IMG/VR virus record: IMGVR_UViG_3300009093_000035
Coordinates: 184,580 to 248,579 of that record
Direction: 5' to 3' (one strand)
DNA length: 64,000 nt
A program made the translations under genes and the position numbers. The notes beneath the pieces are model-generated. The model was given only the letters and a program-made list of their open reading frames with translations, made no database searches and was not told where the DNA came from. Positions 16,609 to 61,958 of this stretch are shown here, piece after piece (positions within the stretch are counted from its first letter, which is position 1; each line of letters starts with the position of its first letter).

Positions 16609-16637
16609 GGTGTAGAACCTCTTGGCTCGTCCGTTAC
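16609..16637 (+). promoter_or_regulatory. Bipartite phage promoter motif upstream of the CCA enzyme
   Basis: GGTGTA-N13-CGTCCGTTAC. Confidence 0.7.
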
Positions 16638-16646
16638 AGGTAGAAC

Positions 16647-17855
16647 ATGACCCAGATCACCAGCTCGAAGTCGGTCGCCCTCATGAAGTTCCTCTCGGCC
16701 CTCGCCCGAAAGCTCGGGGTAGGGGCTCACGTCTACGTCGTGGGTGGGGCCGTCCGGAACTTCCTCATGGGACAGCCGGTGAAGGACCTCGACGTCGTGA
16801 TCGACTCGATCGCCCTCGGAGAAGGTCGAGACAGCGCCTGGTTCGCGTCCAACGTTCTGGAGGCGATCCCCGAGTGGTCCAACCTCACGACGAACCAGTA
16901 CGGGGTCGCGATCCTCACGGTGAAGGGACCCTGGGTCCTCGACGGCTTCTCCATGGAGGGGGAAGTGATCGAGATCGCCAACGCTCGGAAGGAGTCCTAC
17001 GGGTCCTCGGGCGGGAAAGGGAAGGGCTACAAGCCCACCGACGTCCAGCCCTCCACGATCGAGGAGGACATCTACCGGCGCGAGTTCACGTTCAACACCT
17101 TGCTGTGGCGCCTCGAAGACGTTGCGGAAGGACCGGAAGGGGCTCCGGTGATCGACATCACGGGGCTCGGCCTCACCCACCTCAAAGAGAAGCTGATCCA
17201 AACGCCTCTCGATCCGGACCGGACGTTCTCCGACGACCCGACGAGGATGCTCCGGGCGATCAAGTTCCTCATGCGCTACGACCTCCGCCTCTCCGAAGAG
17301 GTCGAGCGGTCGATCATGAAGAACGCCTCGAAGATGACCCAGATGCCTTGGGAGGCGGTCGCTACGATCCTCGTCCGTGACATCCTCTCGCTCCCCAGCG
17401 CGAAGGAAGCTCTCTTCCGGATGATGGGGCTCGGGCTCGTTCGAGTTCTGAAGGGGATGGTCCAGGACCAGCCTCCCTTCGCCTCGTACATGGCGGGTCA
17501 GTTCGGCTCGGGCGAGGCGGACCTGAAGCTTCTCGTCCTCATGGATGACCTCGGGCTCGGAGGACGCGCGTTCAGCTTCCTCTCCCCGGCCCAGAAGGTT
17601 CGCTTCAAGGCTCTGGTCGTCGGGGCCGAGGACGAGTGGGTCCGGAAGCTCTACACGCTTCTCCAGAAGCCCCCGATCCGATCTCTGGCTCTGTTCGCGG
17701 ACTTCGGCCTCGAAGGGAAGGCGCGGTCAGCCCCCGCGATCTTCGCCCGAGAGGCGATCCTCGAAGACCTCTCGTTGGTCGAAGAGCCGGAACGGATCGA
17801 AGCGGTCGTACGGGAGATGCTCGGGGGGATTCCGCCGGCCCCTCCCGCCCCCTAG
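16647..17855 (+). CDS. cca: Class II CCA-adding tRNA nucleotidyltransferase / poly(A) polymerase family
   Basis: YVVGGAVRN..DLDVV, IEIANARKESY, EDIYRREFTFN, FSDDPTRMLRAIKF; tRNAs here lack encoded CCA. Confidence 0.85.
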   Translation: MTQITSSKSVALMKFLSALARKLGVGAHVYVVGGAVRNFLMGQPVKDLDVVIDSIALGEGRDSAWFASNVLEAIPEWSNLTTNQYGVAILTVKGPWVLDGFSMEGEVIEIANARKESYGSSGGKGKGYKPTDVQPSTIEEDIYRREFTFNTLLWRLEDVAEGPEGAPVIDITGLGLTHLKEKLIQTPLDPDRTFSDDPTRMLRAIKFLMRYDLRLSEEVERSIMKNASKMTQMPWEAVATILVRDILSLPSAKEALFRMMGLGLVRVLKGMVQDQPPFASYMAGQFGSGEADLKLLVLMDDLGLGGRAFSFLSPAQKVRFKALVVGAEDEWVRKLYTLLQKPPIRSLALFADFGLEGKARSAPAIFAREAILEDLSLVEEPERIEAVVREMLGGIPPAPPAP

Positions 17856-18040
17856 GACGCCCGCTCGGGCGGGAGCCCCATCGCTGTGCGGAACGCTCGG
17901 CGACGGCTCCTAGCCTCGTCTACGGTCCCCGGCGGTGGTCGAGGAGGCTCCAGCGGGTCGAGCCTCGGGATGTACCACCCGACGCCGAGCCGGTAGACCC
18001 ATCCCTGAGGCGGGGTGGGGATTCGAGTCGCCATGACGCG

Positions 18041-19597
18041 TCAGACGGCCGGGAGCTGCTTCTTCATCCATTCAGCGAAGACATCGAGTGCGTCGTTCGC
18101 GGAACCGACCTCGTGAGACCCGGGGAGCTTCTTCCCATCCGGTCCGCAGACCGTGAATCGCTTCACGTTCGTATGGCCGTACGAATAGTTCTTGTTCGGC
18201 ACCATCAGAGGGATCTGCTTGTTCAGTTGGCGAACCCAACCCACGACCCCTTCCGAGGAAACGATCGCCGAGATCTTCGAATCGGCGCTCTGGAACAAGT
18301 CGATCGTCTTCGGCATCCCCGCCAGATCCTTCGGGCTCGTCGAAAGACGAAGTCCGCGTTCGGCCTTCTGGATCCGCTGACGGAGACGTTCGACGCGACC
18401 TCCCATGTCCTTCCGGTACTGCTTGATGACGTCTGTCTTCTTGTTCGACTTGTACATCTCGTCCAAGGTCTGGTCGAACTGAGCCTTCAGCTCTTCGTAG
18501 CCCAAGCCGGACTCAGGGTCGACGATCTGGACGGGAGCCTTCCCCGCGAGCCGAGACATGTAGATCGAGGCGACCTGTTCAGCAAGGTCGATCCGCGCTT
18601 CGCGAGCCTTCGCTTCCCGAAGCCGAGCGAGGTAGCGGCCCGCGACACGATTGCGAAGATTCGCCATCCGACCCGAGAGAAGACTCTGGACCTGGGTCGG
18701 GTTCTTCTGGAACAGGTTGAGGATCTTCGCCTGCTCGTCGGGGTGAGAGGAGATGTACTGCTCCAGGACGTTCATGAACTCGATCTTCGCCCCGGAGAAC
18801 TGAGAGAGGGTCGCTCCGATCGCCGCCGCGGACTCGCTGTCGCTCAGACCGCGCTGACCGGAGCGGAGGAGATCGAGGTACTGCTTGATGCGTTCCCCGC
18901 GCTTCGCTCGGATCGTGATCTTCGGGAGCTTCTCGTAGAGCCAGTCGAAGAACTGCTTCGCGAGAGGATGGTCCGGGTGGGTGAAGAGGGCGTCGATCAC
19001 GGCCGACCACGAGTCGGGCTCGTCCGAGTCCGGCTTCGTGACCATCTCCTCCTCGTTGGTCCACGTCTCGTTGTAGCGAGCGCGAGTCTTCTCGGACTTG
19101 ATCACGTCGAGTGCGCGCCGGAAGACAAAGGTGATGGCCTGGCGCGAGGCTTCGTCGGGCGTGTACCCCTCGGCCATGACCTTGCTGTTCTTCTGAGCAG
19201 CGTACCGACCGGCTGCCCAGAACGGGGACTTCCCGCCCATGGCGAGGTTGTTCCCCTCTTCGTCGGTTCCCCAGCCCTGGAGCCCCATCAGGGACTGCAT
19301 CAGGTCGGCCGCCTCGGTCGTCCGCTCGACGTTCTGGGAGCGGATGATCTTGTTGACGTTCATGAAGGCCTTCCGGTAGAGACCGGTGTCCCCCTTCGAG
19401 AGCCACTCCGGAGAGACGCCGCCGATCTCCTTCGCCATGTCCCCGATCTTCCCGAGAAGTTGGGTCTTCCCGGTGAGGCCGCGGATCCGAGTGAAGGGGG
19501 CCGCGCCGAGGAAGCCTTCCAGGAACTGGGCTCGCGCGAGCACGTCCATCTCGTCGAAGATGCCGGCCGTCTTGAGGAAATTGGATAGCAGCAACAT
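18041..19597 (-). CDS. Sigma-factor-like domain (regions 2 and 4) within a larger protein carrying KTA/RVA motifs
   Basis: EAADLMQSL, ITFVFRRALDVIKSEKTRARY, HTH-like GLSDSESAAAIGATLSQFSGAK. Confidence 0.4.
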   Translation of the reverse strand: MLLLSNFLKTAGIFDEMDVLARAQFLEGFLGAAPFTRIRGLTGKTQLLGKIGDMAKEIGGVSPEWLSKGDTGLYRKAFMNVNKIIRSQNVERTTEAADLMQSLMGLQGWGTDEEGNNLAMGGKSPFWAAGRYAAQKNSKVMAEGYTPDEASRQAITFVFRRALDVIKSEKTRARYNETWTNEEEMVTKPDSDEPDSWSAVIDALFTHPDHPLAKQFFDWLYEKLPKITIRAKRGERIKQYLDLLRSGQRGLSDSESAAAIGATLSQFSGAKIEFMNVLEQYISSHPDEQAKILNLFQKNPTQVQSLLSGRMANLRNRVAGRYLARLREAKAREARIDLAEQVASIYMSRLAGKAPVQIVDPESGLGYEELKAQFDQTLDEMYKSNKKTDVIKQYRKDMGGRVERLRQRIQKAERGLRLSTSPKDLAGMPKTIDLFQSADSKISAIVSSEGVVGWVRQLNKQIPLMVPNKNYSYGHTNVKRFTVCGPDGKKLPGSHEVGSANDALDVFAEWMKKQLPAV

Positions 19598-19661
19598 GCG
19601 TGAGTCTCTCCGGCGCCAACGTTGGGGCCTTCCCCCAGAAGCTCATCGTTTCGTTACCGGG

Positions 19662-19690
19662 AGTGGAAAGAAGCCGGCCTCGTTCGTTAC
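19662..19690 (+). promoter_or_regulatory. Bipartite promoter upstream of the ECF-like sigma gene
   Basis: AGTGGA-N13-CGTTCGTTAC. Confidence 0.65.
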
Positions 19691-19904
19691 CTCTTCGAGG
19701 GGATCTCGTACCCCTCCGAAGGCGGTGTATACACTACCGATAGTGCCATCGAAAATTCGACCCTGACACCTGGGTTTTTTCTTTACGAGGCCCCACCCGT
19801 TCGGTATATGTACCTCGACCTAGCGTGACCTCGCGTCCGTTCAGGTTCCATTAAACGCCCGAAAGTCACTGACTTCAGGGCCGATTCGGAGAGTCCCCCT
19901 ACCA

Positions 19905-20702
19905 ATGTCTATCCTCCTCGGGTTCGACCCGACGCTCCCCTGTCCAGTTTCGGAAGAAGACCGCTACAAGTTCCTCACGAACTACAGCGACCACCTTTCG
20001 GCCCAGACTCGCCCTTCCCTGTCCGGTCGAGACACCCTCACCGGCAAGTGGATGGAGAAGTACGGAGCCGAGACGCGGGCGATGCTCGTGGAGCACCTCA
20101 GCCACAAGCTTCCGACGTCGCGTCGGGTGAAGGTGGTCGAGGACCACGTTCAGACGTTCCTCGTCCGTCTCGTCGAGCGAGACACGCTCGCTCCGAAGAT
20201 CCTCGAAGCGAAGGGCTCCCGCGGGAACCCGATCAACCCCAGCGTCCTCCGCGTGTGGTGCTTCCAGAGCGCCTGTACCGAGATGCGTGGGTGGGGTGTG
20301 GACGCTTCGCTCCGGAAGTCTCTCGGCGCGAAGACGAATCGCGACCGGATGGCCGATCAGGGGAAGCTCCCGACGGTGGTCGTTCAGTCGACCGAGGCCG
20401 TGATCGAGCGTCGCTACGAGGTCGAGAACGGGGAGGTGGTATCCGACATCCACAACCCGAACGAGGTCTCGATCGAGAGGTCGATGATCTCGTCCGAGAC
20501 CTGCGCTCGGATCCGTTCGCTCGTTCAGCGGAAGGTCGGCTCTTCGGATCCGAGCCTCGTGGGTCTCGTCTCTCTCCTCATGGAGAGCGGAGACCATCGT
20601 GAAGCGGCGGCCGAGATGGGCATCTCCCGTACGAAGATGAAGTCGGCGATGTCTCTGATCCGAGAGGCGCTCGAAGGCGAAGATCTTCTCGCGGTCGACT
20701 AG
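19905..20702 (+). CDS. ECF-like RNA polymerase sigma factor
   Basis: Region 2-like VEDHVQTFLVRL..LRVWCFQSACTEMR; region 4 HTH DHREAAAEMGISRTKMKSAMSLIREAL. Confidence 0.6.
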   Translation: MSILLGFDPTLPCPVSEEDRYKFLTNYSDHLSAQTRPSLSGRDTLTGKWMEKYGAETRAMLVEHLSHKLPTSRRVKVVEDHVQTFLVRLVERDTLAPKILEAKGSRGNPINPSVLRVWCFQSACTEMRGWGVDASLRKSLGAKTNRDRMADQGKLPTVVVQSTEAVIERRYEVENGEVVSDIHNPNEVSIERSMISSETCARIRSLVQRKVGSSDPSLVGLVSLLMESGDHREAAAEMGISRTKMKSAMSLIREALEGEDLLAVD

Positions 20703-21295
20703 AGGTCGCCCGGACCCTGTCCGATCTCCTTCAGCGCGTTCTCGATCATCATCTCGATCCCGGTCTTCGTCCGCCCCAGAAGGTCCGAAAGGTCCTTCAT
20801 CTCTCGGAGCGGACGAAGCATCAGGGACGGAGCTTCGGTTCGTCCGACGCCCATCGACTTGTGCTTCGCGAGAACGCGCGCGGCGTCCTTGAACTCGCCC
20901 TCGACCTTCGCCGCCATGGCGTTGAGGTCGGCGACCCTCCGGTTCAGCACCTTCGTGACTTCACCAGCCGCTCCGCCAAGGATCAGCTTCTCGGCCTTCT
21001 CCCACTGCTCGGGGGTATTCGCCCTCTTCGAGAGCGCGCGACCCGCTACGCGAGCCGGAGAGGCCTTCTTGCTGGCCTTCTCGTAGTCATCGGCGACGTT
21101 CTGGGCGAGGTCCCAAACCCAGTGGGTCTCGTCGTCGAGCCAGCCACCGAGGTCCTTCTTGTCGAACTCGCTGGCCGCCGCCTCGGCCAGCTCGGTCATG
21201 TTGACCTCGCCGGTCTTCGGGTCGACGTAGTCCTCGACCATCTTCTTCATCCACGTCTTCACAGACGCCTTTGAAGGATCTGCTGCGGTTCTCAT
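20699..21295 (-). CDS. Hypothetical, putative virion protein
   Basis: Strong GC3 bias; RTA/RVA/KRA motifs. Confidence 0.65.
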   Translation of the reverse strand: MRTAADPSKASVKTWMKKMVEDYVDPKTGEVNMTELAEAAASEFDKKDLGGWLDDETHWVWDLAQNVADDYEKASKKASPARVAGRALSKRANTPEQWEKAEKLILGGAAGEVTKVLNRRVADLNAMAAKVEGEFKDAARVLAKHKSMGVGRTEAPSLMLRPLREMKDLSDLLGRTKTGIEMMIENALKEIGQGPGDL

Positions 21296-21296
21296 C

Positions 21297-21968
21297 TCAG
21301 TGTCCTCCGAAGCCTGAGGTCTGATACAGCGGCTTCCCGTCCCACTTGTAGGCGGTCTGGGAGTCGGTGACCTTCACGTACATCCGATTTCCGCCGGACG
21401 TCTGAGGGATCTTCTTGATCTCGGGTCCGGAGAAGTGGTTGGGCTGGGCCACGACGTAGTCCGCCCCGCGCTCCTCGCGAACGACCTTCCCATCGACTGG
21501 TCGGATACCGACCTGCTTCCCCTTCAGAGAAGTGACCTGGTAGAAATTGATGTTCGTCTGGTCATAGCCCCAAGACGAGTACAGCAGATCTCCGACCTGG
21601 AGTCCATGCTGGAAGTTCTTCTTCTCTTCGAGGCGCTTTCGCTTCTCGGCGACCTGGGCCTCGTAGCTGATGACCTGGTCCACGATCGATCGGGAACGAG
21701 CGGCGTCGTCTCGGAAGCGTCGGTACCAGAGGGGCTTGTCGGCCTTCCCCGCCCAAGCCGCTGCCATGATCGCGCCTTCCATCTCCCAGGACCAGATCTC
21801 CAGCCCTTCCGGAGTATCCTCCCGCTTCAGCGTCGGGTTGTCCTTCGGGATGAAGCTCGCGCGTGGGAACGTGAAGCTTGCGGCTTCCTTCAAGAGCGGA
21901 AGGAGCGCCGACCGAAGCTCGGGCTTCGAGTGGGCGAGGCGGATGAGAGATCGGCGGAGAGTGTTCAT
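21297..21968 (-). CDS. Hypothetical with LIRLAHSKPELR leader
   Basis: Shared leader; LQVGDLLYSSWGYDQTNINFYQV resembles a common small phage domain. Confidence 0.7.
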   Translation of the reverse strand: MNTLRRSLIRLAHSKPELRSALLPLLKEAASFTFPRASFIPKDNPTLKREDTPEGLEIWSWEMEGAIMAAAWAGKADKPLWYRRFRDDAARSRSIVDQVISYEAQVAEKRKRLEEKKNFQHGLQVGDLLYSSWGYDQTNINFYQVTSLKGKQVGIRPVDGKVVREERGADYVVAQPNHFSGPEIKKIPQTSGGNRMYVKVTDSQTAYKWDGKPLYQTSGFGGH

Positions 21969-22022
21969 GTCGCTCTTCGTGGGTAGCTCTCATTGCGGGC
22001 GTATAGGTCCCGAAACGACGAG

Positions 22023-22051
22023 AGTGTAAGAGTCAGGCCTTCGCCCGTTAC
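22023..22051 (+). promoter_or_regulatory. Bipartite promoter
   Basis: AGTGTA-N13-CGCCCGTTAC, ending 6 nt before ATG 22058. Confidence 0.7.
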
Positions 22052-22057
22052 TAGGTC

Positions 22058-22480
22058 ATGGACACGGCCCTCGCTCCACGTCGACCCCTTCGCCGTTCTT
22101 TCCTCTCGCGGGAGAAAGTGAAGGAGATCCAAGATCTTACGTTGAAGATCGCGGGAGAGGTCCTTCCGAGCGGGGTCGTTCCGCTCGTTCGCTGGAACTA
22201 CTCGCGGGAGTCGTTGGGCCTCGCCTTCACGAGCTTCCTGTGCTTCCGAGATCCTCGGATCACCTACTCGCGCCGTCTCATGAAGTACGCCTCGGAGGCG
22301 GAACAGATCGAAACCGTCTACCACGAGATCTCCCACCTCATCGTCTTCTACGATCTCTCGGCGAACCATGACACAAGCGGGGTCTGGGAGGCGATGCGAG
22401 CGGAAGGAGACCACGGACCCCTCTTCCGCGCTGCGATGGCAAAGTTCGGATACCCGAACCCGACGGGTTGCGGCCGCTAG
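22058..22480 (+). CDS. SprT-like zinc metalloprotease
   Basis: TVYHEISH..DHGPLF. Confidence 0.75.
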   Translation: MDTALAPRRPLRRSFLSREKVKEIQDLTLKIAGEVLPSGVVPLVRWNYSRESLGLAFTSFLCFRDPRITYSRRLMKYASEAEQIETVYHEISHLIVFYDLSANHDTSGVWEAMRAEGDHGPLFRAAMAKFGYPNPTGCGR

Positions 22481-25949: not shown

Positions 25950-25989
25950 GAGGGTCGTCCAAGAGAACGGAATAGGCTTTCCAAAAGGC

Positions 25990-27663: not shown

Positions 27664-27711
27664 GGTTCTCCCCTATGGGAGCCCATTGTCTCCTCAACGG
27701 GGGACCTCCGA

Positions 27712-28347: not shown

Positions 28348-28356
28348 GATGTAACC

Positions 28357-36890: not shown

Positions 36891-37298
36891 TCACTCCCCG
36901 AGGTCGATCACGGTGGTTTGGGTCTGGACCCCGAAGACGTTGACGAGCCAGTTCACGGTGACCCCGTCCGCTCCCGTCACGATCACGAGAAGGTTCCCCT
37001 CCCCATCGAAGTCGAAGGAGACGTCCCAGAGGGAGGCCGCCGTGTTCTTCATCGGGGCGTAGACGTCGATCGACGAGATCAGGTCAGGCAGCCCATCCGA
37101 CTCGCGACGAAGAAACACGCGCTTCTGAACGTGGTAGGCACCGTTGTTCGAGGAAGACCCCGCGACCACTTCCACGTCGAACGCGGTGACCGTGGAGTGA
37201 TCCACGGTATCCCGGGTCGCCATCGTAGGCACGCTGTCCGTAGTGACCACCGTCGGAGATCGAGCGTCTACACCCATGATGAGAACCCTCCTGATCAC
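36891..37298 (-). CDS. Hypothetical, paralog of 6368-6772
   Basis: Colinear similarity. Confidence 0.7.
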   Translation of the reverse strand: MIRRVLIMGVDARSPTVVTTDSVPTMATRDTVDHSTVTAFDVEVVAGSSSNNGAYHVQKRVFLRRESDGLPDLISSIDVYAPMKNTAASLWDVSFDFDGEGNLLVIVTGADGVTVNWLVNVFGVQTQTTVIDLGE

Positions 37299-38287
37299 CC
37301 ATTACTCCTTCGCCAGAAGGACTCTTGGACTTGGACGCAGAGATCGTTGATCTTGGCGTAGTTCGGATCCTTCGGGAGCGGAGCCGTAACCTTCTTGGCT
37401 TCGGCCTGAAGCTTCGTCGCCTGTTCCATGAGGTGATCGTAGGACCACTCGCCCCGGCGGATCGCGAGAAGCTCCTCCGCGTCGTCGCGATAGACGAGCA
37501 CCCCCTTCCCGGAGCAGATCTCCAGGCACATTCTCATGAGACGAACGAGGTGCATCGCGTGCTTCGTGTCGTAGCCGTACTTCGCTTCGAGCGCGGCACG
37601 CTTCTCGTTCCGATTCTTCTGCCAGTCCAGGAACTGGTTCCAGTGCTTCAGATCGGTGCGGTAGCGCTTCTCCGCCGCGAGAAGCTCCATGACGTTCGGG
37701 TCGACCTCGATCTCCCCTCCGCTCTCTCGGGTCTTCTCGATCGTGGCCTCGTAGGCTCCGATCATCTCGGGGGAGATCTTCACCTTCTCCAGTCCGTAGT
37801 CCTTCCGGTCGGGCTGAACCTTCGGCGGGTTGAGGAGCCACTTGCGGTGGGTCTCGATCCGTCCGAGCTGGGAGTAGGCGTACCCCGAGAACGTCGCGCG
37901 GATCGCCTGGGAGAGGAAGATCTCCCGAGCCTCCCGGAGCATCCCTCCCTCCTCCGACATGAAGAGGACGTCCGCGTCCCGGACGAAGAGGACCTCGATG
38001 ATGTTGGGGTTGCAAGCCGCCGCGAGGAGGCAGAACTTCCGGACGTCGAAGAGGACGCGATCGATCACATCCTCAGGCTTCGTTCCTGGAGGTGCGTCCT
38101 CGGGCTTGATCTCGAACTGTTCGAACTCGTAGGCGAATCCGAGGACGATCTCCTTCGGAGCCACCACGATCCCCTTCGTGTCGACGTCCGAGTCCGGAAG
38201 GTTCGTCCCGTAGGCGTGACTTCCGTGGTTCGCGAGGAAGATCGTGTGGGCCGCGTAGTTGAAGGGAGGATGGAGGTTCTTGGACAT
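37295..38287 (-). CDS. Pol-beta-superfamily nucleotidyltransferase (RlaP/YcgL-like, RNA repair associated)
   Basis: GSHAYGTNLPDSDVDTKG, CNPNIIEVLF, GYDTKHAMHLVRL, LLAIRRG. Confidence 0.8.
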   Translation of the reverse strand: MSKNLHPPFNYAAHTIFLANHGSHAYGTNLPDSDVDTKGIVVAPKEIVLGFAYEFEQFEIKPEDAPPGTKPEDVIDRVLFDVRKFCLLAAACNPNIIEVLFVRDADVLFMSEEGGMLREAREIFLSQAIRATFSGYAYSQLGRIETHRKWLLNPPKVQPDRKDYGLEKVKISPEMIGAYEATIEKTRESGGEIEVDPNVMELLAAEKRYRTDLKHWNQFLDWQKNRNEKRAALEAKYGYDTKHAMHLVRLMRMCLEICSGKGVLVYRDDAEELLAIRRGEWSYDHLMEQATKLQAEAKKVTAPLPKDPNYAKINDLCVQVQESFWRRSNG

Positions 38288-38296: not shown

Positions 38297-38325
38297 GTAA
38301 CGAAGGAGAGACGGGTACTTACACC
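38297..38325 (-). promoter_or_regulatory. Bipartite promoter
   Basis: GGTGTA-N13-CCTTCGTTAC. Confidence 0.65.
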
Positions 38326-39757: not shown

Positions 39758-39833
39758 TGGGTCCGACCGGATTCGAACCGGTACATGTCCGTTTATGAGA
39801 CGGGGGTTCTGGAACCTGTTGAACTACGGACCC
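39758..39833 (-). tRNA. Solitary tRNA(CAU), Ile2 or elongator Met
   Basis: Acceptor GGGTCCG/CGGACCC, loop CTCATAA, T arm ACCGG-TTCGAAT-CCGGT. Confidence 0.85.
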
Positions 39834-41937: not shown

Positions 41938-41966
41938 GTAACGAACGAGACCGCGACGTCTACACT
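41938..41966 (-). promoter_or_regulatory. Bipartite promoter
   Basis: AGTGTA-N13-CGTTCGTTAC. Confidence 0.75.
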
Positions 41967-45355: not shown

Positions 45356-45425
45356 GTAACGAACGAGGTCCGGATCTTTACACTCCGATCTTCGGAAGTG
45401 TAAACGAGACCCCGTCGCTCGTTAC
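45356..45425. promoter_or_regulatory. Divergent pair of bipartite promoters (45356-45384 minus; 45397-45425 plus)
   Basis: Back-to-back AGTGTA-N13-CG(T/C)TCGTTAC between divergent ORFs. Confidence 0.8.
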
Positions 45426-45441
45426 ATAGGCGGAGAGAACG

Positions 45442-47811: not shown

Positions 47812-48330
47812 TCGAACGGTACCTCCGAAGAGGGACCCTTACGCCGCCGAGGATTCCTTGTCGGTGAGCTTCAGAGGAATTCCTCGGCGGAATAGCTCGT
47901 TGAGAGCCGCTTGAGGGATGGCGAGCGCGATGTCCCGCTTCTTCGGATCGGAGAAGAACCCATGGAGGCGACCCTTCGCAAACTCCTGGAGGTCATCCGA
48001 GTGGCGTTGCCTACACCACATGAGGGCCCAGATCTCGTGGACGTCGTTATCGTCGTCCTCGTTCTTCGCCGACGTCCGGTAAGGGCCGTCTTGGATCGTC
48101 TCCGGGTCCTCTTGAACCGTCGGCGGAGCTTCCTCTTGGGTCGTCTCCGGGTCCTCGCAGCAGGTCGAGTGGTCGTGGGTCGGAACGGTCTTCCCGAAGT
48201 ACGCGAAAACGGCTCGCTTCGCGGCTTGGTATCGACTTCGAGCCCAGATCAACCCGACCCCCAAGAAGGGGACCACGCTCATGATCGCAATCAACTCGTC
48301 CTGACAGAAGTGCATATCGTCTCCCCTCCT

Positions 48331-48359
48331 GTAACGAACGGGGTCCCGGTCTTTACACT
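48331..48359 (-). promoter_or_regulatory. Bipartite promoter
   Basis: AGTGTA-N13-CGTTCGTTAC. Confidence 0.75.
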
Positions 48360-48376
48360 CTCGGCACCCCTTAGGT

Positions 48377-48886: not shown

Positions 48887-48901
48887 GGAACATCCCTTCT
48901 C

Positions 48902-50262: not shown

Positions 50263-50291
50263 GTAACGGGCGAGGAGAGCTTCTCTACACT
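50263..50291 (-). promoter_or_regulatory. Bipartite promoter
   Basis: AGTGTA-N13-CGCCCGTTAC. Confidence 0.7.
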
Positions 50292-50627: not shown

Positions 50628-51443
50628 TCAGGTCACGTTCTCGGGGACGATCCCGAAGAGAGCCTCCACACGCTCCGGAGTCGACATGTCGTGAAGCGGC
50701 TTCGGATGGAAGGGCCGAAGCTCGTTGCGGACGTACCGGAGGGTCCCCCCGTTTCGACCGTGATGCTTCGGGGGAAGTTGTTCGGCTTCCTCGGGCGTGT
50801 ACTTCCGTTCGACCTCGACCTCGACCCGAGTGACGAAGGCTCCGCGCCGGAAGTGTTCCGGGTAGGCGTCGAAGTCGACCCCGACGCTCCGGAGCATCTC
50901 TCGCTTCTCCTCGCTCGTTTTGTTGAGAAGTTCCTTGTGATGGAAGCACGTCGAGGCCGCCATCGTGTAGGAGTTCTTCCGCGCATCCAGCTCGCGCCAG
51001 AGCAGCGTAGCTGCCGCGTCCGCGATCGTCGGGACCGACCACGCCCGCGAATCGAAGAGAGGAGACTGGCCCGCCTTCTCCGGGATCCGAGCGTCGAGAT
51101 TCCGAGCGAACCACGACGAGGCGAAGGCCGCCGTCATGGACGCGATCTTCTGAGCCCGAAGTCCGAAGTAGCCGTCCGAGTCTTCGTTCGGCTGAAGCAG
51201 CACGAGGGAGATCTCGTCCGACTGAGTGTAGCCGACGCGAGCCCCGGTCTCGGCGACGAGCGCGCAGGTCAGATCGTACATCATCGACGACAATCGGACG
51301 TCGTACGGACGTTCGAGGTCGCGGGTGAACGCGGAGAACGCGCGCCCGTCGAGACGGATGCAGATCGGGTACGTCAGGCGCCGAGCGCTCTCGACGCCTT
51401 CAAGCTGCTTCATGTGATCGCCCAGAGTGTCCATCATTCCCAT
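50628..51443 (-). CDS. Thg1-like 3'-5' polymerase (tRNAHis guanylyltransferase family)
   Basis: RLDGRAFSAFT, YTQSDEISL, FDSR, WRELDARKNS. Confidence 0.9.
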   Translation of the reverse strand: MGMMDTLGDHMKQLEGVESARRLTYPICIRLDGRAFSAFTRDLERPYDVRLSSMMYDLTCALVAETGARVGYTQSDEISLVLLQPNEDSDGYFGLRAQKIASMTAAFASSWFARNLDARIPEKAGQSPLFDSRAWSVPTIADAAATLLWRELDARKNSYTMAASTCFHHKELLNKTSEEKREMLRSVGVDFDAYPEHFRRGAFVTRVEVEVERKYTPEEAEQLPPKHHGRNGGTLRYVRNELRPFHPKPLHDMSTPERVEALFGIVPENVT

Positions 51444-53640: not shown

Positions 53641-53669
53641 GTAACGAACGAGGCGCGCTCCGCTACACT
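53641..53669 (-). promoter_or_regulatory. Bipartite promoter
   Basis: AGTGTA-N13-CGTTCGTTAC. Confidence 0.75.
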
Positions 53670-54533: not shown

Positions 54534-54562
54534 GTAACGAACGCCGCGCCTGACTTTACACT
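54534..54562 (-). promoter_or_regulatory. Bipartite promoter
   Basis: AGTGTA-N13-CGTTCGTTAC. Confidence 0.75.
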
Positions 54563-57093: not shown

Positions 57094-57477
57094 TCATGCT
57101 GCCTTCTTCGAGCCCTCGTACCGGGCCCTCTCGTTATCACGGGCGGTCGCCCACTCCGCGCAGTCGTCTTCGTAGGAGCGGAGTTTCTCCGGACTCTCCC
57201 ACCAAACCTTCAACTCGACGCCGCCCTGACGAGGGCACGTCCAGAGGACCGGGATCTCTCGAAGGAGACCCTCCGCCCGACAACGGGCGACGTGGGCCTT
57301 CACCTTCGCTCGGTTCGGCTTCGCGACGGGGAACGCGATCGAGCCGGCCCACACGCGAGGGTCGTCCTGCTGGAGGACGACGCCCTGGAGCGGCTTCTGC
57401 CAGCAGTCGGGATGGGCCGCCTGGTACGGCCATCGCTTCGAACCCACCACATCGCCCGGCTGGAACGTCTTCGTCAT
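57094..57477 (-). CDS. Hypothetical protein
   Basis: Immediately downstream of promoter 57484-57512. Confidence 0.6.
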   Translation of the reverse strand: MTKTFQPGDVVGSKRWPYQAAHPDCWQKPLQGVVLQQDDPRVWAGSIAFPVAKPNRAKVKAHVARCRAEGLLREIPVLWTCPRQGGVELKVWWESPEKLRSYEDDCAEWATARDNERARYEGSKKAA

Positions 57478-57483
57478 GACCTA

Positions 57484-57512
57484 GTAACGAACGAGACCTC
57501 GAAGGCTACACC
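57484..57512 (-). promoter_or_regulatory. Bipartite promoter
   Basis: GGTGTA-N13-CGTTCGTTAC. Confidence 0.75.
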
Positions 57513-58000
57513 TTCGATTTCCGTTTCCGTTCCTGAAGGAATCTCATGAGGGCGACCTGGCAGTGCGGAGCGTTCGAGAGGATCTCCATCGTCATCCGGT
57601 TCGTCGCCCACCGAGAGTCGTCGAGCGCGACCCTGTCCCAGGTCTTCCCTCGAACCTTCCATCTTTTCTCGGACATTCCTTCAGGTAGGTCCGTGTTGTT
57701 CCAGTAGGCGTAGTCCTGGATCCATCGAGGGAGACGACCGATCTTCTCGATCAGACGCGGAAGTCCGTAGGGGATCACGTAGACATACTTCGTGTATCCG
57801 CGGTCCGGATCGACGAAGACATGGAGCCCCGCGTCTCCGTAGGCCCTCACGAAGTTCTCGCTCCCGGTCACTGAGTCCACGAAGTCGTACTCGGAAGCGA
57901 GCTTCATGACGCCGTTCCAGATCCGAGAACGGAGGAACTCGACGCCGCGAGAGAAGTCCTGGAACCGGAATCGGAACCCGTAGTAGATCTTCGTACTCAT
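57506..58000 (-). CDS. Hypothetical protein
   Basis: MSTKIYYG..YWNNTD.PE phage-like motif. Confidence 0.6.
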   Translation of the reverse strand: MSTKIYYGFRFRFQDFSRGVEFLRSRIWNGVMKLASEYDFVDSVTGSENFVRAYGDAGLHVFVDPDRGYTKYVYVIPYGLPRLIEKIGRLPRWIQDYAYWNNTDLPEGMSEKRWKVRGKTWDRVALDDSRWATNRMTMEILSNAPHCQVALMRFLQERKRKSKV

Positions 58001-58480
58001 GGATCACTTACCCTCCGAGAAGGTTCCGATGAAGCCGAGGCGCTCTCGACCTTTCCCGGGACAGTCATGACACGGCGTCTCGACGTAGGGGTGGAGCGGG
58101 CCCGGCTCTGGGAGAGAGGGAAGGCGGGCCTTCACGCACCGCTTCCAGAAGCACCCCGTCGCGTCCGGATAGGCGTCCTGGAACTCGCAGTAGCGTCGAG
58201 CGGCCTCGACCTGGTCTGGGGTGGCGGAAGGGCTCCCGGGGCCTCCTAGGCAGCCGGAAAGACCCTCCTCAGGAGTCTTCCTCACCGACCAGCTCCAGGA
58301 TCCCTCGGGCCAGCTCCCGAGCCGTCTCGCGGTCGATCTTGAGGAACGAGGTTACTCGTCCCGGGGTTCCGCTGGGACGGGTGAGGAGAACGTCTCCCGT
58401 CCCCGTGATCATCACACCCACCGTCCGCGAAGAGTCGTCTTCGACGAAGAGGTAGCCCTTGGTCTTGTTGATCTCGATCA

Positions 58481-58948
58481 TCATCGCTGGAAGTTCCTCG
58501 TCTGTCCATACTCCTTCGTCACCGTCACGGACGAGGGGGAGACATCGATGGTCAGCCCACCGCAGCCGCCTTCGAGGACGAAGTCGAGCGCCTGCTGATA
58601 GGTCGGGAGGGGCTCCCGACGAAGCCAATCGGTCTTCTGATGCCAGAGGTCCCCGACCGTCGAGAGGTACTTCGCGAGGGCTTCCGCCGTCGGGAAGACG
58701 GGAGTGACCGGAGAGCCCTCGCTCACTTTCTCCCAGACCTGCCATCCTTCCCCGGAGGGCGGATCGACGTCGACTAGGCCGTACCCGAAGCACTCCTGGC
58801 AGTCCTCTCTCCGAACGAAGTTGGAACCGGCCTTCGGTCGGGCGCGGCACTTCGCGCACTTCGCCATTCCCGAATCGAGGAACCCGGGCCAGGTCTCTTC
58901 GAGCGGATGGTTGAAGTCGAGGGGGACGCGGTAGATCTGTCGGCTCAT
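58481..58948 (-). CDS. Hypothetical protein
   Basis: RVPLDF..GWQVWEKVSEGSPVTPVF phage-like motif. Confidence 0.6.
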   Translation of the reverse strand: MSRQIYRVPLDFNHPLEETWPGFLDSGMAKCAKCRARPKAGSNFVRREDCQECFGYGLVDVDPPSGEGWQVWEKVSEGSPVTPVFPTAEALAKYLSTVGDLWHQKTDWLRREPLPTYQQALDFVLEGGCGGLTIDVSPSSVTVTKEYGQTRNFQR

Positions 58949-60208
58949 GTTGCGGGCTCCACGTTCTGGACGCAGGCGGCGACCAGATGGTCACACATCT
59001 GTTCGTAGCCGAAGGTCTCGTTCAGATCTTCGCGCGAGATCTCGTTCCAGCCACAGTGACCGACGAGGGGTTGCTCGGCCGCGACCGATCCGCACTTCTC
59101 GCACTTCACCCTCGGCATGATCGCCGGTCGGGTCTGCATAACGAAGACCCTCATGGCGTCGACCTCGTTCCGAAGTCGACGACGAGTTCCGTCTCGGTGA
59201 AGACGCGCCAGACCTTGAACTCGTGAGAGACCTTCCGCGCTTCCACCAGCGCGAGTTCCGAGGTCCCGAACAAGAAGGCTTCCTCGCGCTTCGAGGTCGT
59301 CCCCGAATAGGGAGCCTCGGGATTCTTCCCAGAGTAGGTGAGGTAGAGGGGTCCGGGACTTCCGACCGCGTCCACGGCGACGTTGTTGAGGGACACGACG
59401 TAGTAGATGGCTGAAGCCTTCATGTTCAACCTCCCACCACGAAGGCCGGAGCTGGCTTTTCGCCGGGGCTCGCGTTCTCCGGGCCCGCCCATTCGGCGAA
59501 GCTCTCGCGACCGCGATTCTGTGAGACCGCGACGGTGGTGACACCGGAGCCGGTCATCGTTCGGTACGAGTGATCCGGGCCTCCCGCCACGAGGACGGGG
59601 AGATCGTCGGACGCGCCTTCGAGCGCCTTCCGGAGCGCCCCCACGGTGAGGTACCGACGGATCACCGGGGTACCGCTCCGATCCCGAGGTCGACCGCATC
59701 GCGCTCGACCTTCACGGGCGGATCCTGGATCCGAATCCCGAGTCGAGGGCCGTGGGTGCGGACGAGACGGCCGATCGCCTCGTCCGAGGTCTTCCCACAG
59801 TCCCACATCTCTCGCTTCCCCTCGATGTAGGCCATCGTGTCGGTCGCCCGCTTCTCCAGAATGATCGTCGTCATGAGTTCCTCGCTCTAGCCACTCTCTC
59901 GGCGTGAGCGGCGCGAGCCGCTTCCCGAACCCGACCGTAGAGCGACCGTCGCTCTTCGACCGGAAGATCCCGAGCCTTCACGCATCGGACTCGCTCGCAC
60001 AGGAAGAACCCGGGGCCGTCCGTCGCGCCGCAGACTTCATCGTCCGTGTAGTAGGCCGTTCCGATCGGCTTCCCGCACGCGTCGCACGGAGTGCTTTCCC
60101 GAAAGCGTCCCGAGCCGGTGTGTCGATCGGTGTAGGCGAAACGGCGGAGCACGTTGCTCACGACGAGACCCTCACGAACCGGCGCTGACGAATCGTTCCC
60201 ATACACGC

Positions 60209-60237
60209 CTAACGAACGAGGAAGCTCCCGTTACACT
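60209..60237 (-). promoter_or_regulatory. Bipartite promoter
   Basis: AGTGTA-N13-CGTTCGTTAG. Confidence 0.7.
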
Positions 60238-61153
60238 GTTCGGAAAGCGAACGTGGGGATCGGATTCTCCGAGACTCGGCCTCCGTCGTCCGCCCACCGA
60301 TCGAGCGCCAGAGCCTCTTCGGAATACCCACGCGATTTCAGGATCTTCAGAACGAAGTTCTGCGGGTCCCGACTCTGGGGAATCTTGAGGAAGATCCGAA
60401 CGACAGGATCGTACTTCATGGAGGCCCCTCCCGCCGGACTCTCCGGCCGGAGATTCTCCCGGGTGCGGCGAAGAATGAGATCCGGGTCGAGGTTCGTCCT
60501 CCGAACGAGGTCCTTCACTTCTTGGATGAGATCCTTCATCGCTTCTCTCCTACCTTCGGGAAGACCCGTAGAAGCACTGGGTGCAGTTGTAGTTCACCGG
60601 AGCCGAGAGGAAGATCGCCTTGTAGGTCTTCCCGCACTTCGGGCACACGTAGGACTCCTCGGGGAGCGAGGGACCTACGAAGAGAGGGGTGGCCTCCTCG
60701 GGGGGCGTAGCGGGCTCGGATGGAGCCGGGGAGGGCTCCTTCGGGGGCTCAGGCTCCGCAGCCCCGAGAAGCGCGAGGATGTCGTTCATGACTTCTTCAT
60801 TCGCTCGCGAAACAGGACGAAGGCCTTCTCGACGGCTCTGAGAACGCGAATGAGGTTTCGGTCCTTCCGCTTCGAGAGGGCGTCGTAGAGAACCTGGTCC
60901 ATCCCGTAGAGCCGACCGTAACAACTAGCCGTTCGGAGAAGGATGTCAGAGGCGAATTTCCGAACCTCCTCAGCGAGGTAGATCTCATTCTCCCACGCGA
61001 TGCGAGTGCGGTTGAACTCGCCCAGCTTCCGAAGTTCGACGTCTCGTGGCTCCCACTTCAGGATGACCCGACGTTCGTACTCGACCGCGAGCCGATAAGC
61101 GCGAAACGCTGCTTCCAGGGTTTCCGAATCGGGCTCGGGGATCTTGTAGAGGC

Positions 61154-61891
61154 TCATCCCTCTTCCTCGTCCGGAGCGACGATCCCCGGAAGGGCCGGAA
61201 CGGAGGGTCCGCTCCCGAGACGGTTCTGGAGCGACTCGACGCCGAGCTTGTGGAGGGAGAGGGCCATGAAGGCTTCAATCTCCGCCTTCACGGTCGCCGA
61301 GACCTTCTCCGAAGCCTCCTGGAACGACTCCAGAACGAAGGGGGCGTTCGACTGGATCTCCTGGAGAGCCTTCTCCACGGCCCAGATGATCTCCTTCTTG
61401 TCGTCCTTCGAGAGCGTCTTCTTGTCGAGGAGCGTCCGCGTCGTCTCGACCTTCTCCTTCAGGAACCCCACGAGGGTCTTCATCTTCAGACGGAAGGTCT
61501 TCTGGATCTTCTCCGCCTCGGTACGCTCACCGGGAGGCGGGTCCTCCATCCTCTCGTGAAGGATGGAGTTGATCGTGCAGGGGACTCCTCCGCCCATGTT
61601 GAGGCTCGTGATCATCTCTGCGAACTGGGCCGGCGAGAGATCGATCTCGATCAGCGTCTTCAGGTTCCCGTGGTACCAGTCCCGGCTGAGGCTGTGCTTC
61701 ACGGAGGCCTGGGTGATCGAGAGCCGGAAGAACGTCCCGTGTTGCTCGATGCTCGAACCGAAGAGGTGGCGACCTCCCTGGATTCGTCCGATCGAGACCA
61801 TCCCGAAGGACTCGTGCTCCTCCTCGAACTCGGTGTCGAGGGACGAGTTCACGGTCTCGGTGCGCTTGTAGGGGCGGCGGAAGTCGAACAT
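61154..61891 (-). CDS. Conserved phage hypothetical protein
   Basis: H.SFGMV..R, LFGS, LSPAQFAEMITSLN.G.GVPCT. Confidence 0.7.
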   Translation of the reverse strand: MFDFRRPYKRTETVNSSLDTEFEEEHESFGMVSIGRIQGGRHLFGSSIEQHGTFFRLSITQASVKHSLSRDWYHGNLKTLIEIDLSPAQFAEMITSLNMGGGVPCTINSILHERMEDPPPGERTEAEKIQKTFRLKMKTLVGFLKEKVETTRTLLDKKTLSKDDKKEIIWAVEKALQEIQSNAPFVLESFQEASEKVSATVKAEIEAFMALSLHKLGVESLQNRLGSGPSVPALPGIVAPDEEEG

Positions 61892-61929
61892 GGGGGACGC
61901 CTTTCTTGACGCGAAGGTCTCGCATTCAA

Positions 61930-61958
61930 GTAACGAACGGGGCGCCTCCCTTTACACT
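61930..61958 (-). promoter_or_regulatory. Bipartite promoter
   Basis: AGTGTA-N13-CGTTCGTTAC. Confidence 0.75.

What the first reader, a model, noticed from the sequence alone, without database searches (positions are those of the whole stretch)
16609..61958. 14-copy bipartite promoter RGTGTA-N13-CGTTCGTTAC with invariant spacing
Seen at 16609+, 19662+, 22023+, 38297-, 41938-, 45356-, 45397+, 48331-, 50263-, 53641-, 54534-, 57484-, 60209-, 61930-. Every copy points into a downstream gene, most within ~5-40 nt of the start, including a back-to-back pair between divergent ORFs. Established: ECF sigmas recognise CGT-containing -10 elements with rigid spacing and often autoregulate. One copy precedes the ECF-like gene at 19905. 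The regulon includes the CCA enzyme and the RlaP-like nucleotidyltransferase.
Basis: partly seen in the sequence, partly recalled or inferred. Interest (0 to 1): 0.65.

Follow-up and report, generated by a model that had tools for sequence, protein, structure and literature searches.

The report
Megaphage sigma-factor promoter set
A two-part, 29-base promoter signal repeated at least 29 times in an uncultivated soil phage of about 473 kb most likely marks the genes switched on by the phage's own very divergent ECF-type sigma factor, which makes it a new example of a well-known viral strategy.

Summary
All 14 copies sit at the stated coordinates (expected by chance 0.02). There are 20 copies in the 248.6-kb contig and 9 more in a second contig that is probably part of the same ~473-kb rhizosphere megaphage. 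The core GTGTA-N17-CGTTA is by far the most over-represented spaced dyad (28 seen, 0.08 expected), and its spacing never varies.

Every copy lies at a gene boundary and points into the next gene. The start codon follows after exactly 6 nt in 7 sites (leaderless) or after 15-24 nt with a GGAG-type ribosome site in 15 sites.

The gene at 19905-20702 matches no Pfam sigma model at threshold. Its predicted fold is nonetheless sigma2 plus sigma4: the top 18 hits in an unbiased search of 48,161 chains are all sigma factors.

Three related megaphages carry orthologues of this gene. Each has its own variant of the same architecture as its top dyad: GTGTAAT/CGTTAC, GGGTAAA/CGTTAC and GTG[T/A]AAA/CGCTT. 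Some orthologous genes (RlaP, a kinase) keep a copy.

No RNA polymerase gene was found in any of the five records. Most likely the host core polymerase plus this phage sigma reads these promoters, driving a non-structural regulon (tRNA repair, NAD salvage). Start sites and the sigma-promoter pairing are inferred, not measured.

The parts
16609..16637 (+). Motif copy 1 (1 mismatch). The ATG of the CCA/poly(A)-polymerase-family gene follows 9 nt after GTTAC.
   Evidence: Relatives L047 and L048 keep a copy before the orthologous gene.
19662..19690 (+). Motif copy 2 (-35 box GTGGA, perfect -10 half), 214 nt upstream of the sigma gene. Candidate autoregulatory promoter.
   Evidence: Degenerate copies sit at the same place in L047 and L048.
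19781..19810 (+). Sigma-A-like promoter candidate for the sigma gene: CTTTAC, an 18-nt spacer, then TATATG, preceded by a T run. It is conserved in position before the sigma orthologues.
   Evidence: CTTTAC and the GTATA region align in 5-6 of 7 loci. Inference only.
19857..19881 (+). Conserved hairpin in the sigma-gene leader, just upstream of the GGAG ribosome site (19888-19891).
   Evidence: 9 pairs, 4 of them with compensatory changes across 7 loci. No Rfam family matches.
19905..20702 (+). P0001, 265 aa: a divergent two-domain sigma factor of ECF (group 4) type, with sigma2 at about residues 42-142 and sigma4 at about residues 192-265.
   Evidence: AF2 model pLDDT 80.9. Foldseek top hits are sigmaE and SigL. 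VIA Z 7.2-8.3. In the unbiased search the top 18 hits are all sigma factors. Only a weak Sigma70_r4_2 hit by sequence.
22023..22051 (+). Motif copy 3 (2 mismatches). The ATG of the SprT-like gene follows exactly 6 nt after GTTAC (leaderless class).
38297..38325 (-). Motif copy 4. The ATG of the RlaP-family nucleotidyltransferase gene follows after 9 nt.
   Evidence: The orthologue in G002 keeps that phage's own variant copy.
41938..41966 (-). Motif copy 5 (exact). The GTG of an 86-aa ORF follows after 6 nt (leaderless class).
45356..45384 (-). Motif copy 6 (exact), half of the back-to-back pair. ATG after 17 nt, with a GGAG ribosome site.
   Evidence: Back-to-back pairs recur in G002, G003 and G004.
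45397..45425 (+). Motif copy 7, the other half of the back-to-back pair. ATG after 16 nt, with a GGAG ribosome site.
48331..48359 (-). Motif copy 8 (exact). ATG after 15 nt (158-aa ORF, 47839-48315).
50263..50291 (-). Motif copy 9 (2 mismatches). ATG after 23 nt. The TAG of its -35 box is the stop codon of the preceding ORF.
53641..53669 (-). Motif copy 10 (exact). ATG after 15 nt (69-aa ORF). It heads the unit that contains the Thg1-like gene.
54534..54562 (-). Motif copy 11 (exact). ATG after 18 nt.
57484..57512 (-). Motif copy 12 (exact). ATG after 6 nt (leaderless class). The TAG of its -35 box is the stop of the preceding ORF, so the whole intergenic spacer is the promoter. The VWA-domain gene lies downstream.
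60209..60237 (-). Motif copy 13 (ends in GTTAG). The downstream start is uncertain: a 14-codon ORF at 6 nt, or a GTG with a GAGGG ribosome site at about 47 nt.
61930..61958 (-). Motif copy 14 (exact). ATG after 38 nt (245-aa ORF).
16647..17855 (+). Regulon gene: tRNA nucleotidyltransferase / poly(A) polymerase family, next to the 45-tRNA array.
   Evidence: PF01743, E 1.5e-14
22058..22480 (+). Regulon gene: SprT-like.
   Evidence: PF10263, E 1.5e-7
37295..38287 (-). Regulon gene: RlaP family (RNA-repair-pathway nucleotidyltransferase).
   Evidence: PF10127, E 1.5e-17
50628..51443 (-). Gene in the unit headed by copy 10: Thg1-like tRNA-His guanylyltransferase.
   Evidence: PF04446, E 1.8e-25. 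Unit membership is inferred from gene order.

Best explanation
The 29-bp element is a promoter of the sigma-70-family bipartite type. It has a -35 box (A/G)GTGTA(A/G) and a -10 box CGTTAC, extended upstream to TCGTTCGTTAC in this phage, separated by a rigid 17-bp spacer.

It is most likely read by the host's core RNA polymerase carrying the phage-encoded sigma factor P0001 (window 19905-20702). P0001 is a highly divergent two-domain (sigma2-sigma4) ECF-type protein.

The proposed order of events is inferred. The sigma gene is first transcribed from a conserved sigma-A-like promoter that lies in front of a structured leader. The new sigma then switches on at least 29 units across the ~473-kb genome, and possibly boosts its own gene through the copy at 19662.

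These units are non-structural. They include tRNA repair and maturation genes (CCA-type enzyme, RlaP, Thg1-like), NAD salvage (NUDIX plus NAMPT), an AAA_33 kinase, a SprT-like gene and many small ORFs.

Transcription probably starts at the seventh base after GTTAC. This would give leaderless mRNAs where the start codon sits exactly there. Elsewhere it would give very short leaders that begin with the ribosome-binding site.

Shown: the motif, its statistics, its positions, its conservation across genomes, and the predicted fold of P0001. Inferred: the start site, which polymerase is used, the sigma-motif pairing, and the timing.
For: Statistics: 14 sites in the window against 0.02 expected. GTGTA-N17-CGTTA occurs 28 times against 0.08 expected and is the top dyad of the genome. 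Spacing is strictly N17.

Anatomy: every site is co-oriented with the next gene. The start codon follows at exactly 6 nt in 7 sites, at 9-10 nt in 4 sites, and at 15-24 nt with a GGAG or GAGG ribosome site in 15 sites. In four window sites the stop codon of the preceding ORF lies inside the -35 box, so the promoter fills the whole spacer. Sigma-70-type promoters and terminators are not enriched in window 44-64 kb. The portal and terminase genes have no copy within more than 20 kb.

Sigma: the P0001 model has pLDDT 80.9. Residues 42-142 superpose on sigmaE/RpoE region 2 (Z 7.2-7.6, rmsd 3.0-3.3 A over 80-85 residues). Residues 192-265 superpose on region 4 (Z 6.5-7.7). The whole chain superposes on M. 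tuberculosis SigH in holoenzyme (Z 8.3). The top 18 of 48,161 representative chains are all sigma factors.

Comparative: G002, G003 and G004 share 90-100 of 235 ORFs with this phage and carry sigma orthologues at 44-49% identity. De novo, each has the same architecture as its top dyad but in a genome-exclusive variant (19, 8 and 23 copies). RlaP, the AAA_33 kinase and a 263-aa protein keep a copy in both this phage and G002 (3 in both, 7 in this phage only, 0 in the relative only, 251 in neither).

The other HTH candidate is a tandem sigma4-like protein. Its recognition helices are identical across the four phages although the motifs differ.

No RNA polymerase domains were found in about 1.02 Mb of these phages. 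The sigma family was not found in 185,579 species genomes.
Against: No transcript data exist for this phage, so no start site is measured.

P0001 does not reach any curated sigma threshold by sequence. No family member hits Sigma70_r2 and only 4 of 33 give sub-threshold r4_2 hits. The structural Z-scores (8.3 or below) are in the range the tool calls middling.

The sigma4 recognition helix does not track the -35 variants in a simple way. P0007 and P0017 have nearly the same helix but different -35 boxes.

A motif copy upstream of the sigma gene is not conserved in G002-G004.

About 127 kb of the genome was not seen, so a phage polymerase or another sigma cannot be excluded.

The complex test with the beta-prime clamp helices could not be run.
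Confidence: 0.7

Rival explanations
1. The motif is a promoter but is read by a host sigma factor (for instance a host ECF sigma). P0001 would then do something else.
For: The -10 half contains CGT, as many bacterial ECF promoters do (established knowledge). The host is unknown. The pairing with P0001 is only inferred, and the sigma4 helix does not co-vary simply with the -35 box.
Against: Each of four related phages has its own exclusive variant, which would need four hosts with matching sigma variants. Each phage carries its own diverged P0001 orthologue. This phage has a copy before the sigma gene.
Confidence: 0.12
2. The motif is a promoter served by another phage factor. Candidates are a sigma-appropriation pair of the T4 MotA/AsiA kind, the tandem sigma4-like HTH protein (contig 164373-164984), or a phage polymerase encoded in the ~127 kb not seen.
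For: A 203-aa protein with two sigma4-like HTH repeats exists next to a NusG-like gene. Two HTH domains could in principle read two boxes. Part of the genome is unseen.
Against: That protein is 79-83% identical across the four phages and its recognition helices are invariant, although the motifs differ. The -10 half does not resemble a sigma-A -10 box, as sigma appropriation would need. No polymerase domains were found in five records. Single-subunit polymerase promoters are continuous rather than bipartite (established knowledge).
Confidence: 0.08
3. The motif is not a promoter. It would be an oriented protein-binding site such as a stoperator-like repressor site, or a recombination or cassette boundary.
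For: Repeated, asymmetric, intergenic and co-oriented sites also describe the stoperators of cluster A mycobacteriophages (established knowledge).
Against: The motif is bipartite with a non-conserved 13-bp middle and strict spacing. Its distance to start codons is tightly fixed, with 7 sites at exactly 6 nt. Back-to-back divergent pairs occur. It is absent from structural modules. No repeat extends beyond the motif.
Confidence: 0.05

Closest known systems
Phage phiEco32 gp36 sigma and its middle/late promoters
   Same: A phage-encoded distant homologue of sigma factors joins the host core polymerase. Early genes use the host primary sigma, and later classes use the phage sigma (PMC12276001). 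The P0001 model superposes on gp36 in the open complex 9m7y chain F (Z 7.0, 149 residues).
   Different: gp36 promoters are described by one AATGTA element centred at -11.5 and are activated by gp79 (PMC12276001). Here there are two boxes with a rigid 17-bp spacer. No gp79-like partner was sought. The phage is about six times larger and unrelated in sequence.
Bacterial ECF (group 4) sigma factors and their promoters (E. coli sigmaE; M. tuberculosis SigH and SigL; B. subtilis sigmaW)
   Same: The protein has the two-domain sigma2-sigma4 architecture. The promoter has -35 and -10 boxes, a fixed spacing of about 17 bp and CGT in the -10 box. In this phage a copy lies upstream of the sigma's own gene.
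   Different: P0001 fails Pfam and NCBIfam sigma models. The -35 box GTGTA lacks the usual AAC. There is no adjacent co-transcribed anti-sigma gene, since the flanking genes are on the other strand. The protein has a long inter-domain segment with an invariant WGVDASLR...GAKT.R block and a predicted beta-hairpin. The family was found only on phage-like metagenomic contigs.
Sigma cascades of SPO1 (gp28, gp33/34) and T4 (gp55)
   Same: Temporal classes are set by phage sigma proteins on the host core polymerase (PMC13401047 for SPO1; T4 from established knowledge).
   Different: There is no detectable sequence relation. T4 late promoters have a single -10-like box. Timing was not measured here.
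Stoperators of cluster A mycobacteriophages (L5 gp71 sites)
   Same: Many asymmetric sites lie in short intergenic spaces and are oriented with transcription (established knowledge).
   Different: Those are single 13-bp repressor sites without a fixed distance to start codons. This motif is bipartite, with promoter-like geometry.

Membership tests
Sigma-70 family, group 4 (ECF) sigma factor (for P0001) | Sequence match to region 2 (Pfam Sigma70_r2 / TIGR02937) at the curated threshold | tested here: not met
   No r2 hit in P0001 or in any of the 33 family members. No NCBIfam hit for P0001.
Sigma-70 family, group 4 (ECF) sigma factor (for P0001) | Sequence match to region 4 (Sigma70_r4 or r4_2) at the curated threshold | tested here: not met
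   14.8-16.8 bits against a cut-off of 25.7. Only 4 of 33 members give sub-threshold hits. A PDB profile search gives sigma-H at E 0.066 and FliA at E 0.081.
Sigma-70 family, group 4 (ECF) sigma factor (for P0001) | Two-domain fold with sigma2 followed by sigma4, and no regions 1.1 or 3 | tested here: met
   Residues 42-142 match sigma2 (Z 7.2-7.6, rmsd about 3 A over 80-85 residues). Residues 192-265 match sigma4 (Z 6.5-7.7). The top 18 of 48,161 chains are all sigma factors. The Z values are moderate.
Sigma-70 family, group 4 (ECF) sigma factor (for P0001) | Binds core RNA polymerase (beta-prime clamp helices, beta flap) and directs initiation | not testable with these tools
This needs biochemistry.
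ECF-type promoter | Conserved -35 and -10 boxes with a fixed spacer of about 16-17 bp | tested here: met
   GTGTA-N17-CGTTA occurs 28 times, always at N17.
ECF-type promoter | A CGT-containing -10 box | tested here: met
   CGTTA(C) is near-invariant in this phage, G003 and G004. G002 has CGCTT instead.
ECF-type promoter | An AAC-containing -35 box | tested here: not met
   The -35 box is (A/G)GTGTA(A/G). The variants are GTGTAAT, GGGTAAA and GTG[T/A]AAA.
ECF-type promoter | Transcription start about 6-8 nt downstream of the -10 box | not testable with these tools
   No RNA runs hold this sequence. Indirect support: the start codon is exactly 6 nt after GTTAC in 7 sites.
ECF sigma regulatory module | Autoregulation and a co-transcribed anti-sigma factor | tested here: inconclusive
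   A copy lies 214 nt upstream of the sigma gene, but it is not conserved in G002-G004. The sigma gene is monocistronic between genes on the opposite strand. No anti-sigma was identified.
phiEco32 gp36-type phage sigma system | A single AATGTA-like element near -11.5 and dependence on a gp79-like co-factor | tested here: not met
   The motif is bipartite and lacks AATGTA. A gp79 homologue was not searched for.
Stoperator-type repressor sites | A single short asymmetric site with no fixed relation to start codons, in a temperate phage with a repressor | tested here: not met
   The motif is bipartite with a non-conserved centre and has fixed distances to start codons. Lysogeny genes were not examined.

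The most novel reading that the evidence does not exclude
P0001 and its roughly 35 metagenomic relatives would form a phage-only branch of the sigma-70 family that current profile models do not recognise. Its promoter specificity would have diverged among soil megaphages into mutually exclusive variants (GTGTA/CGTTA, GGGTA/CGTTA, GTG[T/A]A/CGCTT) that all keep the same 17-bp spacing, giving natural orthogonal sigma-promoter pairs. The regulon would be a dedicated tRNA-repair and NAD-salvage programme, transcribed as leaderless or near-leaderless mRNAs from promoters that fill 28-35-nt intergenic spacers.
Probability: 0.45. Interest if true: 0.65.

Novelty: new member of a known kind. Interest (0 to 1): 0.55.

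Why it matters
Uncultivated megaphages are known almost only as gene lists, and how they schedule hundreds of genes is open. Here the sequence alone gives a testable regulatory circuit:
- a sigma gene that annotation pipelines miss;
- its probable promoter;
- a defined regulon of at least 29 units enriched in tRNA repair and NAD salvage. These functions are thought to counter host anticodon nucleases and NAD-depleting defences.

Related phages carry diverged sigma orthologues together with diverged versions of the same promoter. That offers a natural series for studying how sigma and promoter specificity change together. It is also a possible source of orthogonal expression parts. The promoter also improves gene calling in these genomes, for example at leaderless starts and internal start codons.

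Tried and rejected
- Megablast of 8 kb of the window against 50,697 phage records found no match.
- A single-protein scan of viral contigs with P0001 found nothing. The alignment-based scan worked.
- An exact-pattern scan of IMG/VR for the long motif found only one other contig. That contig comes from the same sample and is probably part of the same genome. Contigs of 249,771 and 223,499 bp from another sample sum to about the 472,929-bp single contig. I therefore do not count it as independent support.
- Loci from the look-up of encoding contigs could not be used as genome handles.
- PHROGs matched only one of the six largest ORFs (a DNA helicase) and nothing for the other five.
- Rfam has no family for the sigma-gene leader.
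It gave no verdict.
- Dyad analysis on single 20-kb loci of the more distant relatives (L043, L055-L058) was uninformative.
- A strict search for more CTTTAC-N16-19-TATA promoters found only the one before the sigma gene.
- I looked for one-to-one co-variation between the sigma4 helix or the sigma2 loops and the box variants. None was convincing.
- The large representative-protein search was not run, because the fold result had already settled the question of the protein's kind.
Full report
OBSERVATION

Seven are exact, five have one mismatch and two have two. Shuffled sequence gives 0.02 matches on average.

The window is the last 64 kb of a 248,579-bp IMG/VR contig. The contig holds 20 copies, and the reversed control pattern finds none. 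A weight matrix built from these sites scores them at 26-43. The next best position in the contig scores 17, and shuffles reach 20.5 at most.

Conservation stops at the edges of the 29 bases, apart from a weak AGG a few bases downstream. The repeat is therefore the motif itself and not a longer duplicated block.

I counted every pair of 5-mers separated by 12-20 bases in this contig plus contig G001 (introduced in the next section). GTGTA-N17-CGTTA stands far above everything else, with 28 copies against 0.08 expected. None of the 28 has any spacing other than 17.

WHAT GENOME THIS IS

The window carries 45 tRNA genes and a one-piece tmRNA at 3863-14974. G+C is about 61%.

The sigma-like protein of the window is also found on a 472,929-bp contig. 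In another sample it sits on a 249,771-bp contig.

The only other IMG/VR contig with the long motif is G001 (97,639 bp), which comes from the same sample as the window. A G001 protein lies on a 223,499-bp contig in that other sample. The lengths 249,771 and 223,499 add up to about 473 kb. G001 is thus very probably another piece of the same ~473-kb phage from rhizosphere metagenomes. It adds 9 copies, making 29 in all, but it is not independent evidence.

The portal and large terminase genes lie at contig 153-158 kb. Pfam models of the catalytic domains of multisubunit polymerases and of T7-type polymerase find nothing in the contig. The T7-type model rang in no control genome, so that particular blank is weak. 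The multisubunit models also find nothing in G001-G004.

ANATOMY OF THE SITES

All 29 copies lie at gene boundaries and point into the next gene. The distance from the C of GTTAC to the start codon falls into classes:
- exactly 6 nt in seven sites (window 22023, 41938, 57484; contig 109284; G001 22491, 77512, 78388);
- 9-10 nt in four sites (window 16609, 38297; contig 108815, 129485);
- 15-24 nt with a GGAG or GAGG ribosome site in fifteen sites;
- three outliers in the window: 38 nt (61930), about 47 nt or unclear (60209) and 214 nt (19662, before the sigma gene).

Genes at 6-10 nt have no room for a ribosome site. If CGTTAC is taken as positions -12 to -7, as in sigma-70-family promoters, the seventh base after it is +1. 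That base is the A or G of the start codon in the 6-nt class. The transcripts would then be leaderless.

In the leadered class the same rule puts +1 at the first G of the ribosome site. Relatives G002 and G003 show the same picture, with a conserved GGTGAGGA just after the -10 box. This start-site assignment is inference.

In four window sites (50263, 57484, 60209, 61930) the TAA or TAG inside GTGTAA/GTGTAG is the stop codon of the preceding ORF. At 54534 the stop overlaps the first base of the motif. At 57484 the whole 28-nt spacer between two genes is therefore promoter.

Window 44-64 kb holds ten copies. Sigma-70-type promoters there number 1 against 1.8 expected, and terminator-like hairpins 15 against 15.6 expected, so neither is enriched.

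WHAT IS DOWNSTREAM

The first genes after copies include:
- a CCA-type/poly(A) polymerase-family enzyme, a SprT-like protein and an RlaP nucleotidyltransferase;
- an AAA_33 kinase, and a NUDIX protein that is followed by a nicotinamide phosphoribosyltransferase;
- many small ORFs without family.

Further down the same units lie a Thg1-like enzyme, a VWA protein and perhaps ThyX. RtcB lies near the G001 copies. The head and packaging genes have no copy within more than 20 kb. The motif therefore marks a non-structural class rich in tRNA repair and nucleotide functions.

THE SIGMA-LIKE GENE

Window 19905-20702 encodes P0001 (265 aa). By sequence it gives only a sub-threshold Sigma70_r4_2 hit at its C-terminus and no NCBIfam hit. 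Of 33 aligned relatives, none hits Sigma70_r2 and four give weak r4_2 hits.

The 35 relatives are all unnamed metagenomic proteins, many on contigs of 130-260 kb. A pattern-based scan of 185,579 species genomes found no relative.

An AlphaFold2 model built from the family alignment has a mean pLDDT of 80.9.
- Foldseek ranks E. coli sigmaE and M. tuberculosis SigL first, and nearly all of its top 45 hits are sigma factors. E-values are weak (5e-3) because the two domains are posed differently.
- Domain by domain, residues 42-142 superpose on sigmaE/RpoE region 2 (Z 7.2-7.6, rmsd 3.0-3.3 A, 80-85 residues). Residues 192-265 superpose on region 4 (Z 6.5-7.7).
- The whole chain superposes on SigH in the holoenzyme (Z 8.3).
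- In the search that does not depend on Foldseek, the top 18 of 48,161 representative chains are all sigma factors. phiEco32 gp36 is among them (9m7y_F, Z 7.0).

The Z values are moderate, but the consistency, the domain order and the coverage make a two-domain sigma the best reading. The conserved EDHVQTFL.RL and LR.W.YQSA.TE stretches resemble regions 2.2 and 2.3-2.4. That resemblance rests on my own knowledge and was not tested.

COMPARATIVE EVIDENCE

Three IMG/VR contigs carry orthologues of the sigma:

| Contig | Length | Sigma orthologue identity |
|---|---|---|
| G002 | 199 kb | 49% |
| G003 | 252 kb | 45% |
| G004 | 222 kb | 44% |

Each shares 90-100 of my 235 crude ORFs with the window's contig.

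I ran the same blind dyad count on each of them. The top dyad is again a -35-like box, 17 bases, then a -10-like box, but in a variant of its own:
- G003: AATCGTGTAAT...CGTTAC, 19 exact copies against 0.11 expected;
- G004: GGGGGTAAA...CGTTAC, 8 copies against 0.03 expected;
- G002: ATCGTG[T/A]AAA...CGCTT, 23 copies against about 0.5 expected.

The variants are almost exclusive to their genomes, and N17 dominates everywhere. Back-to-back divergent pairs recur in all of them.

Closer relatives known only from 20-kb loci (L047, L048) keep a GTGTAAGA...CGTTAC copy before the orthologous CCA-type gene. They also keep a degenerate copy before the sigma gene.

Between this phage and G002, RlaP, the AAA_33 kinase and a 263-aa protein each keep a copy of their own phage's variant. 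The tally is 3 genes with a copy in both phages, 7 in this phage only, 0 in the relative only and 251 in neither.

This pattern is what is expected if the factor that reads the motif is encoded by the phage and diverges with it.

A second HTH candidate is a 203-aa protein with two sigma4-like repeats at contig 164373-164984. It is 79-83% identical in the four phages and its recognition helices are unchanged. It is therefore a poor candidate for the variable specificity.

I could not find a simple residue-to-base correspondence in the P0001 family.

THE SIGMA GENE'S OWN CONTROL REGION

The 307-nt divergent spacer before the sigma gene holds three elements:
- the motif copy at 19662;
- CTTTAC-N18-TATATG at 19781-19810, a sigma-A-like pair of hexamers preceded by a T run, whose position is conserved in most of the seven aligned loci;
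- a hairpin at 19857-19881, just before the ribosome site, that is kept by compensatory changes in 4 of 9 pairs and is not in Rfam.

I read this as follows. The host's primary sigma makes the first sigma mRNA, the structured leader controls it, and in this phage the upstream motif copy adds positive feedback. All three steps are inferred.

COMPARISON WITH KNOWN SYSTEMS

It works like phage sigma cascades. The closest described case is phiEco32 gp36, a distant sigma homologue that takes over the host core polymerase for middle and late genes (PMC12276001). The promoter geometry resembles bacterial ECF promoters.

It is not a member of any curated sigma family by sequence. Its -35 box lacks AAC. 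No anti-sigma partner is evident. Unlike gp36 promoters, it has two boxes.

No paper in the library holds the motif string in a phage context. The survey of huge phages mentions phage sigma-70 genes but not this system (PMC7162821).

VERDICT

Start sites and the sigma-promoter pairing remain to be measured.

This is a new member of a known kind: a phage-encoded sigma factor with a dedicated promoter set. Interest is moderate to good because the sigma family is invisible to standard annotation, the promoter variants diverge in step among megaphages, and the circuit is directly testable.

Noticed in passing
window 3863-14974 (minus strand); also 39758-39833 and 11107-11179: An array of 45 tRNA genes plus a one-piece tmRNA (tag ANDSSYDQLAQAA). 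A lone tRNA-Met sits inside the motif-rich region. Rfam calls one extra tRNA that ARAGORN missed. No motif copy faces the array, so its promoter is unknown.
   Followed up: partly
window 19857-19881 (hairpin) and 19781-19810 (hexamer pair): The leader of the sigma gene has a sequence-conserved hairpin with compensatory changes, just before the ribosome site, and a conserved sigma-A-like promoter. Neither is in Rfam. This is a possible translational or stability control of the sigma.
   Followed up: partly
L010:1174-1785 (-) = contig 164373-164984; neighbour L010:1816-2424 (-): A 203-aa protein with two tandem sigma4-like HTH repeats lies next to a weak NusG/KOW-like protein. Both are far better conserved among the four megaphages (79-83% and 68-69% identity) than the ECF-like sigma (44-49%). 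They may be late-transcription factors.
   Followed up: partly
window 3541-3843 (-), 21297-21968 (-), internal in 1917-3536 (-); at least 9 more ORFs elsewhere in the contig and in G001: A 27-residue peptide of the form LR..LIRLAH..PELR..LLPLL recurs at the N-terminus (sometimes inside) of at least 12 otherwise unrelated ORFs. It may be a targeting, packaging or cleavage signal.
   Followed up: no
window 50263, 57484, 60209, 61930 (and 54534): The stop codon of the preceding ORF is the TAA or TAG inside the -35 box (a one-base overlap at 54534). With a 6-nt leaderless start downstream, a promoter fills a spacer of only about 28 nt.
   Followed up: yes
whole contig, e.g. contig 139004, 142864, 143078, 186495 (the last = window 1916): The heptamer GGCGTAA occurs about as often as chance predicts (31 copies). 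However, 28 copies are on the coding strand and 25 are at gene boundaries, often 7-25 nt before an ATG. This could be a second single-box promoter class or a stop-codon context.
   Followed up: partly
G004 (L072-L083): A second strongly over-represented dyad, AGCCT-N14-TAGAT (17 copies against 0.1 expected), is found only in this relative.
   Followed up: no
contig 135540-135884, 33066-33361, 133547-133622, 8468-8538; G001 75036-75380: Segments of about 70-345 bp at 75-85% identity are shared by several loci and by G001. They belong to a multi-copy gene family around a 494-aa ORF (contig 135562-137046) of unknown function.
   Followed up: no
window 18041-19597 (-): A 518-aa ORF without family lies divergent from the sigma gene. 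This arrangement is conserved in every related locus examined.
   Followed up: no
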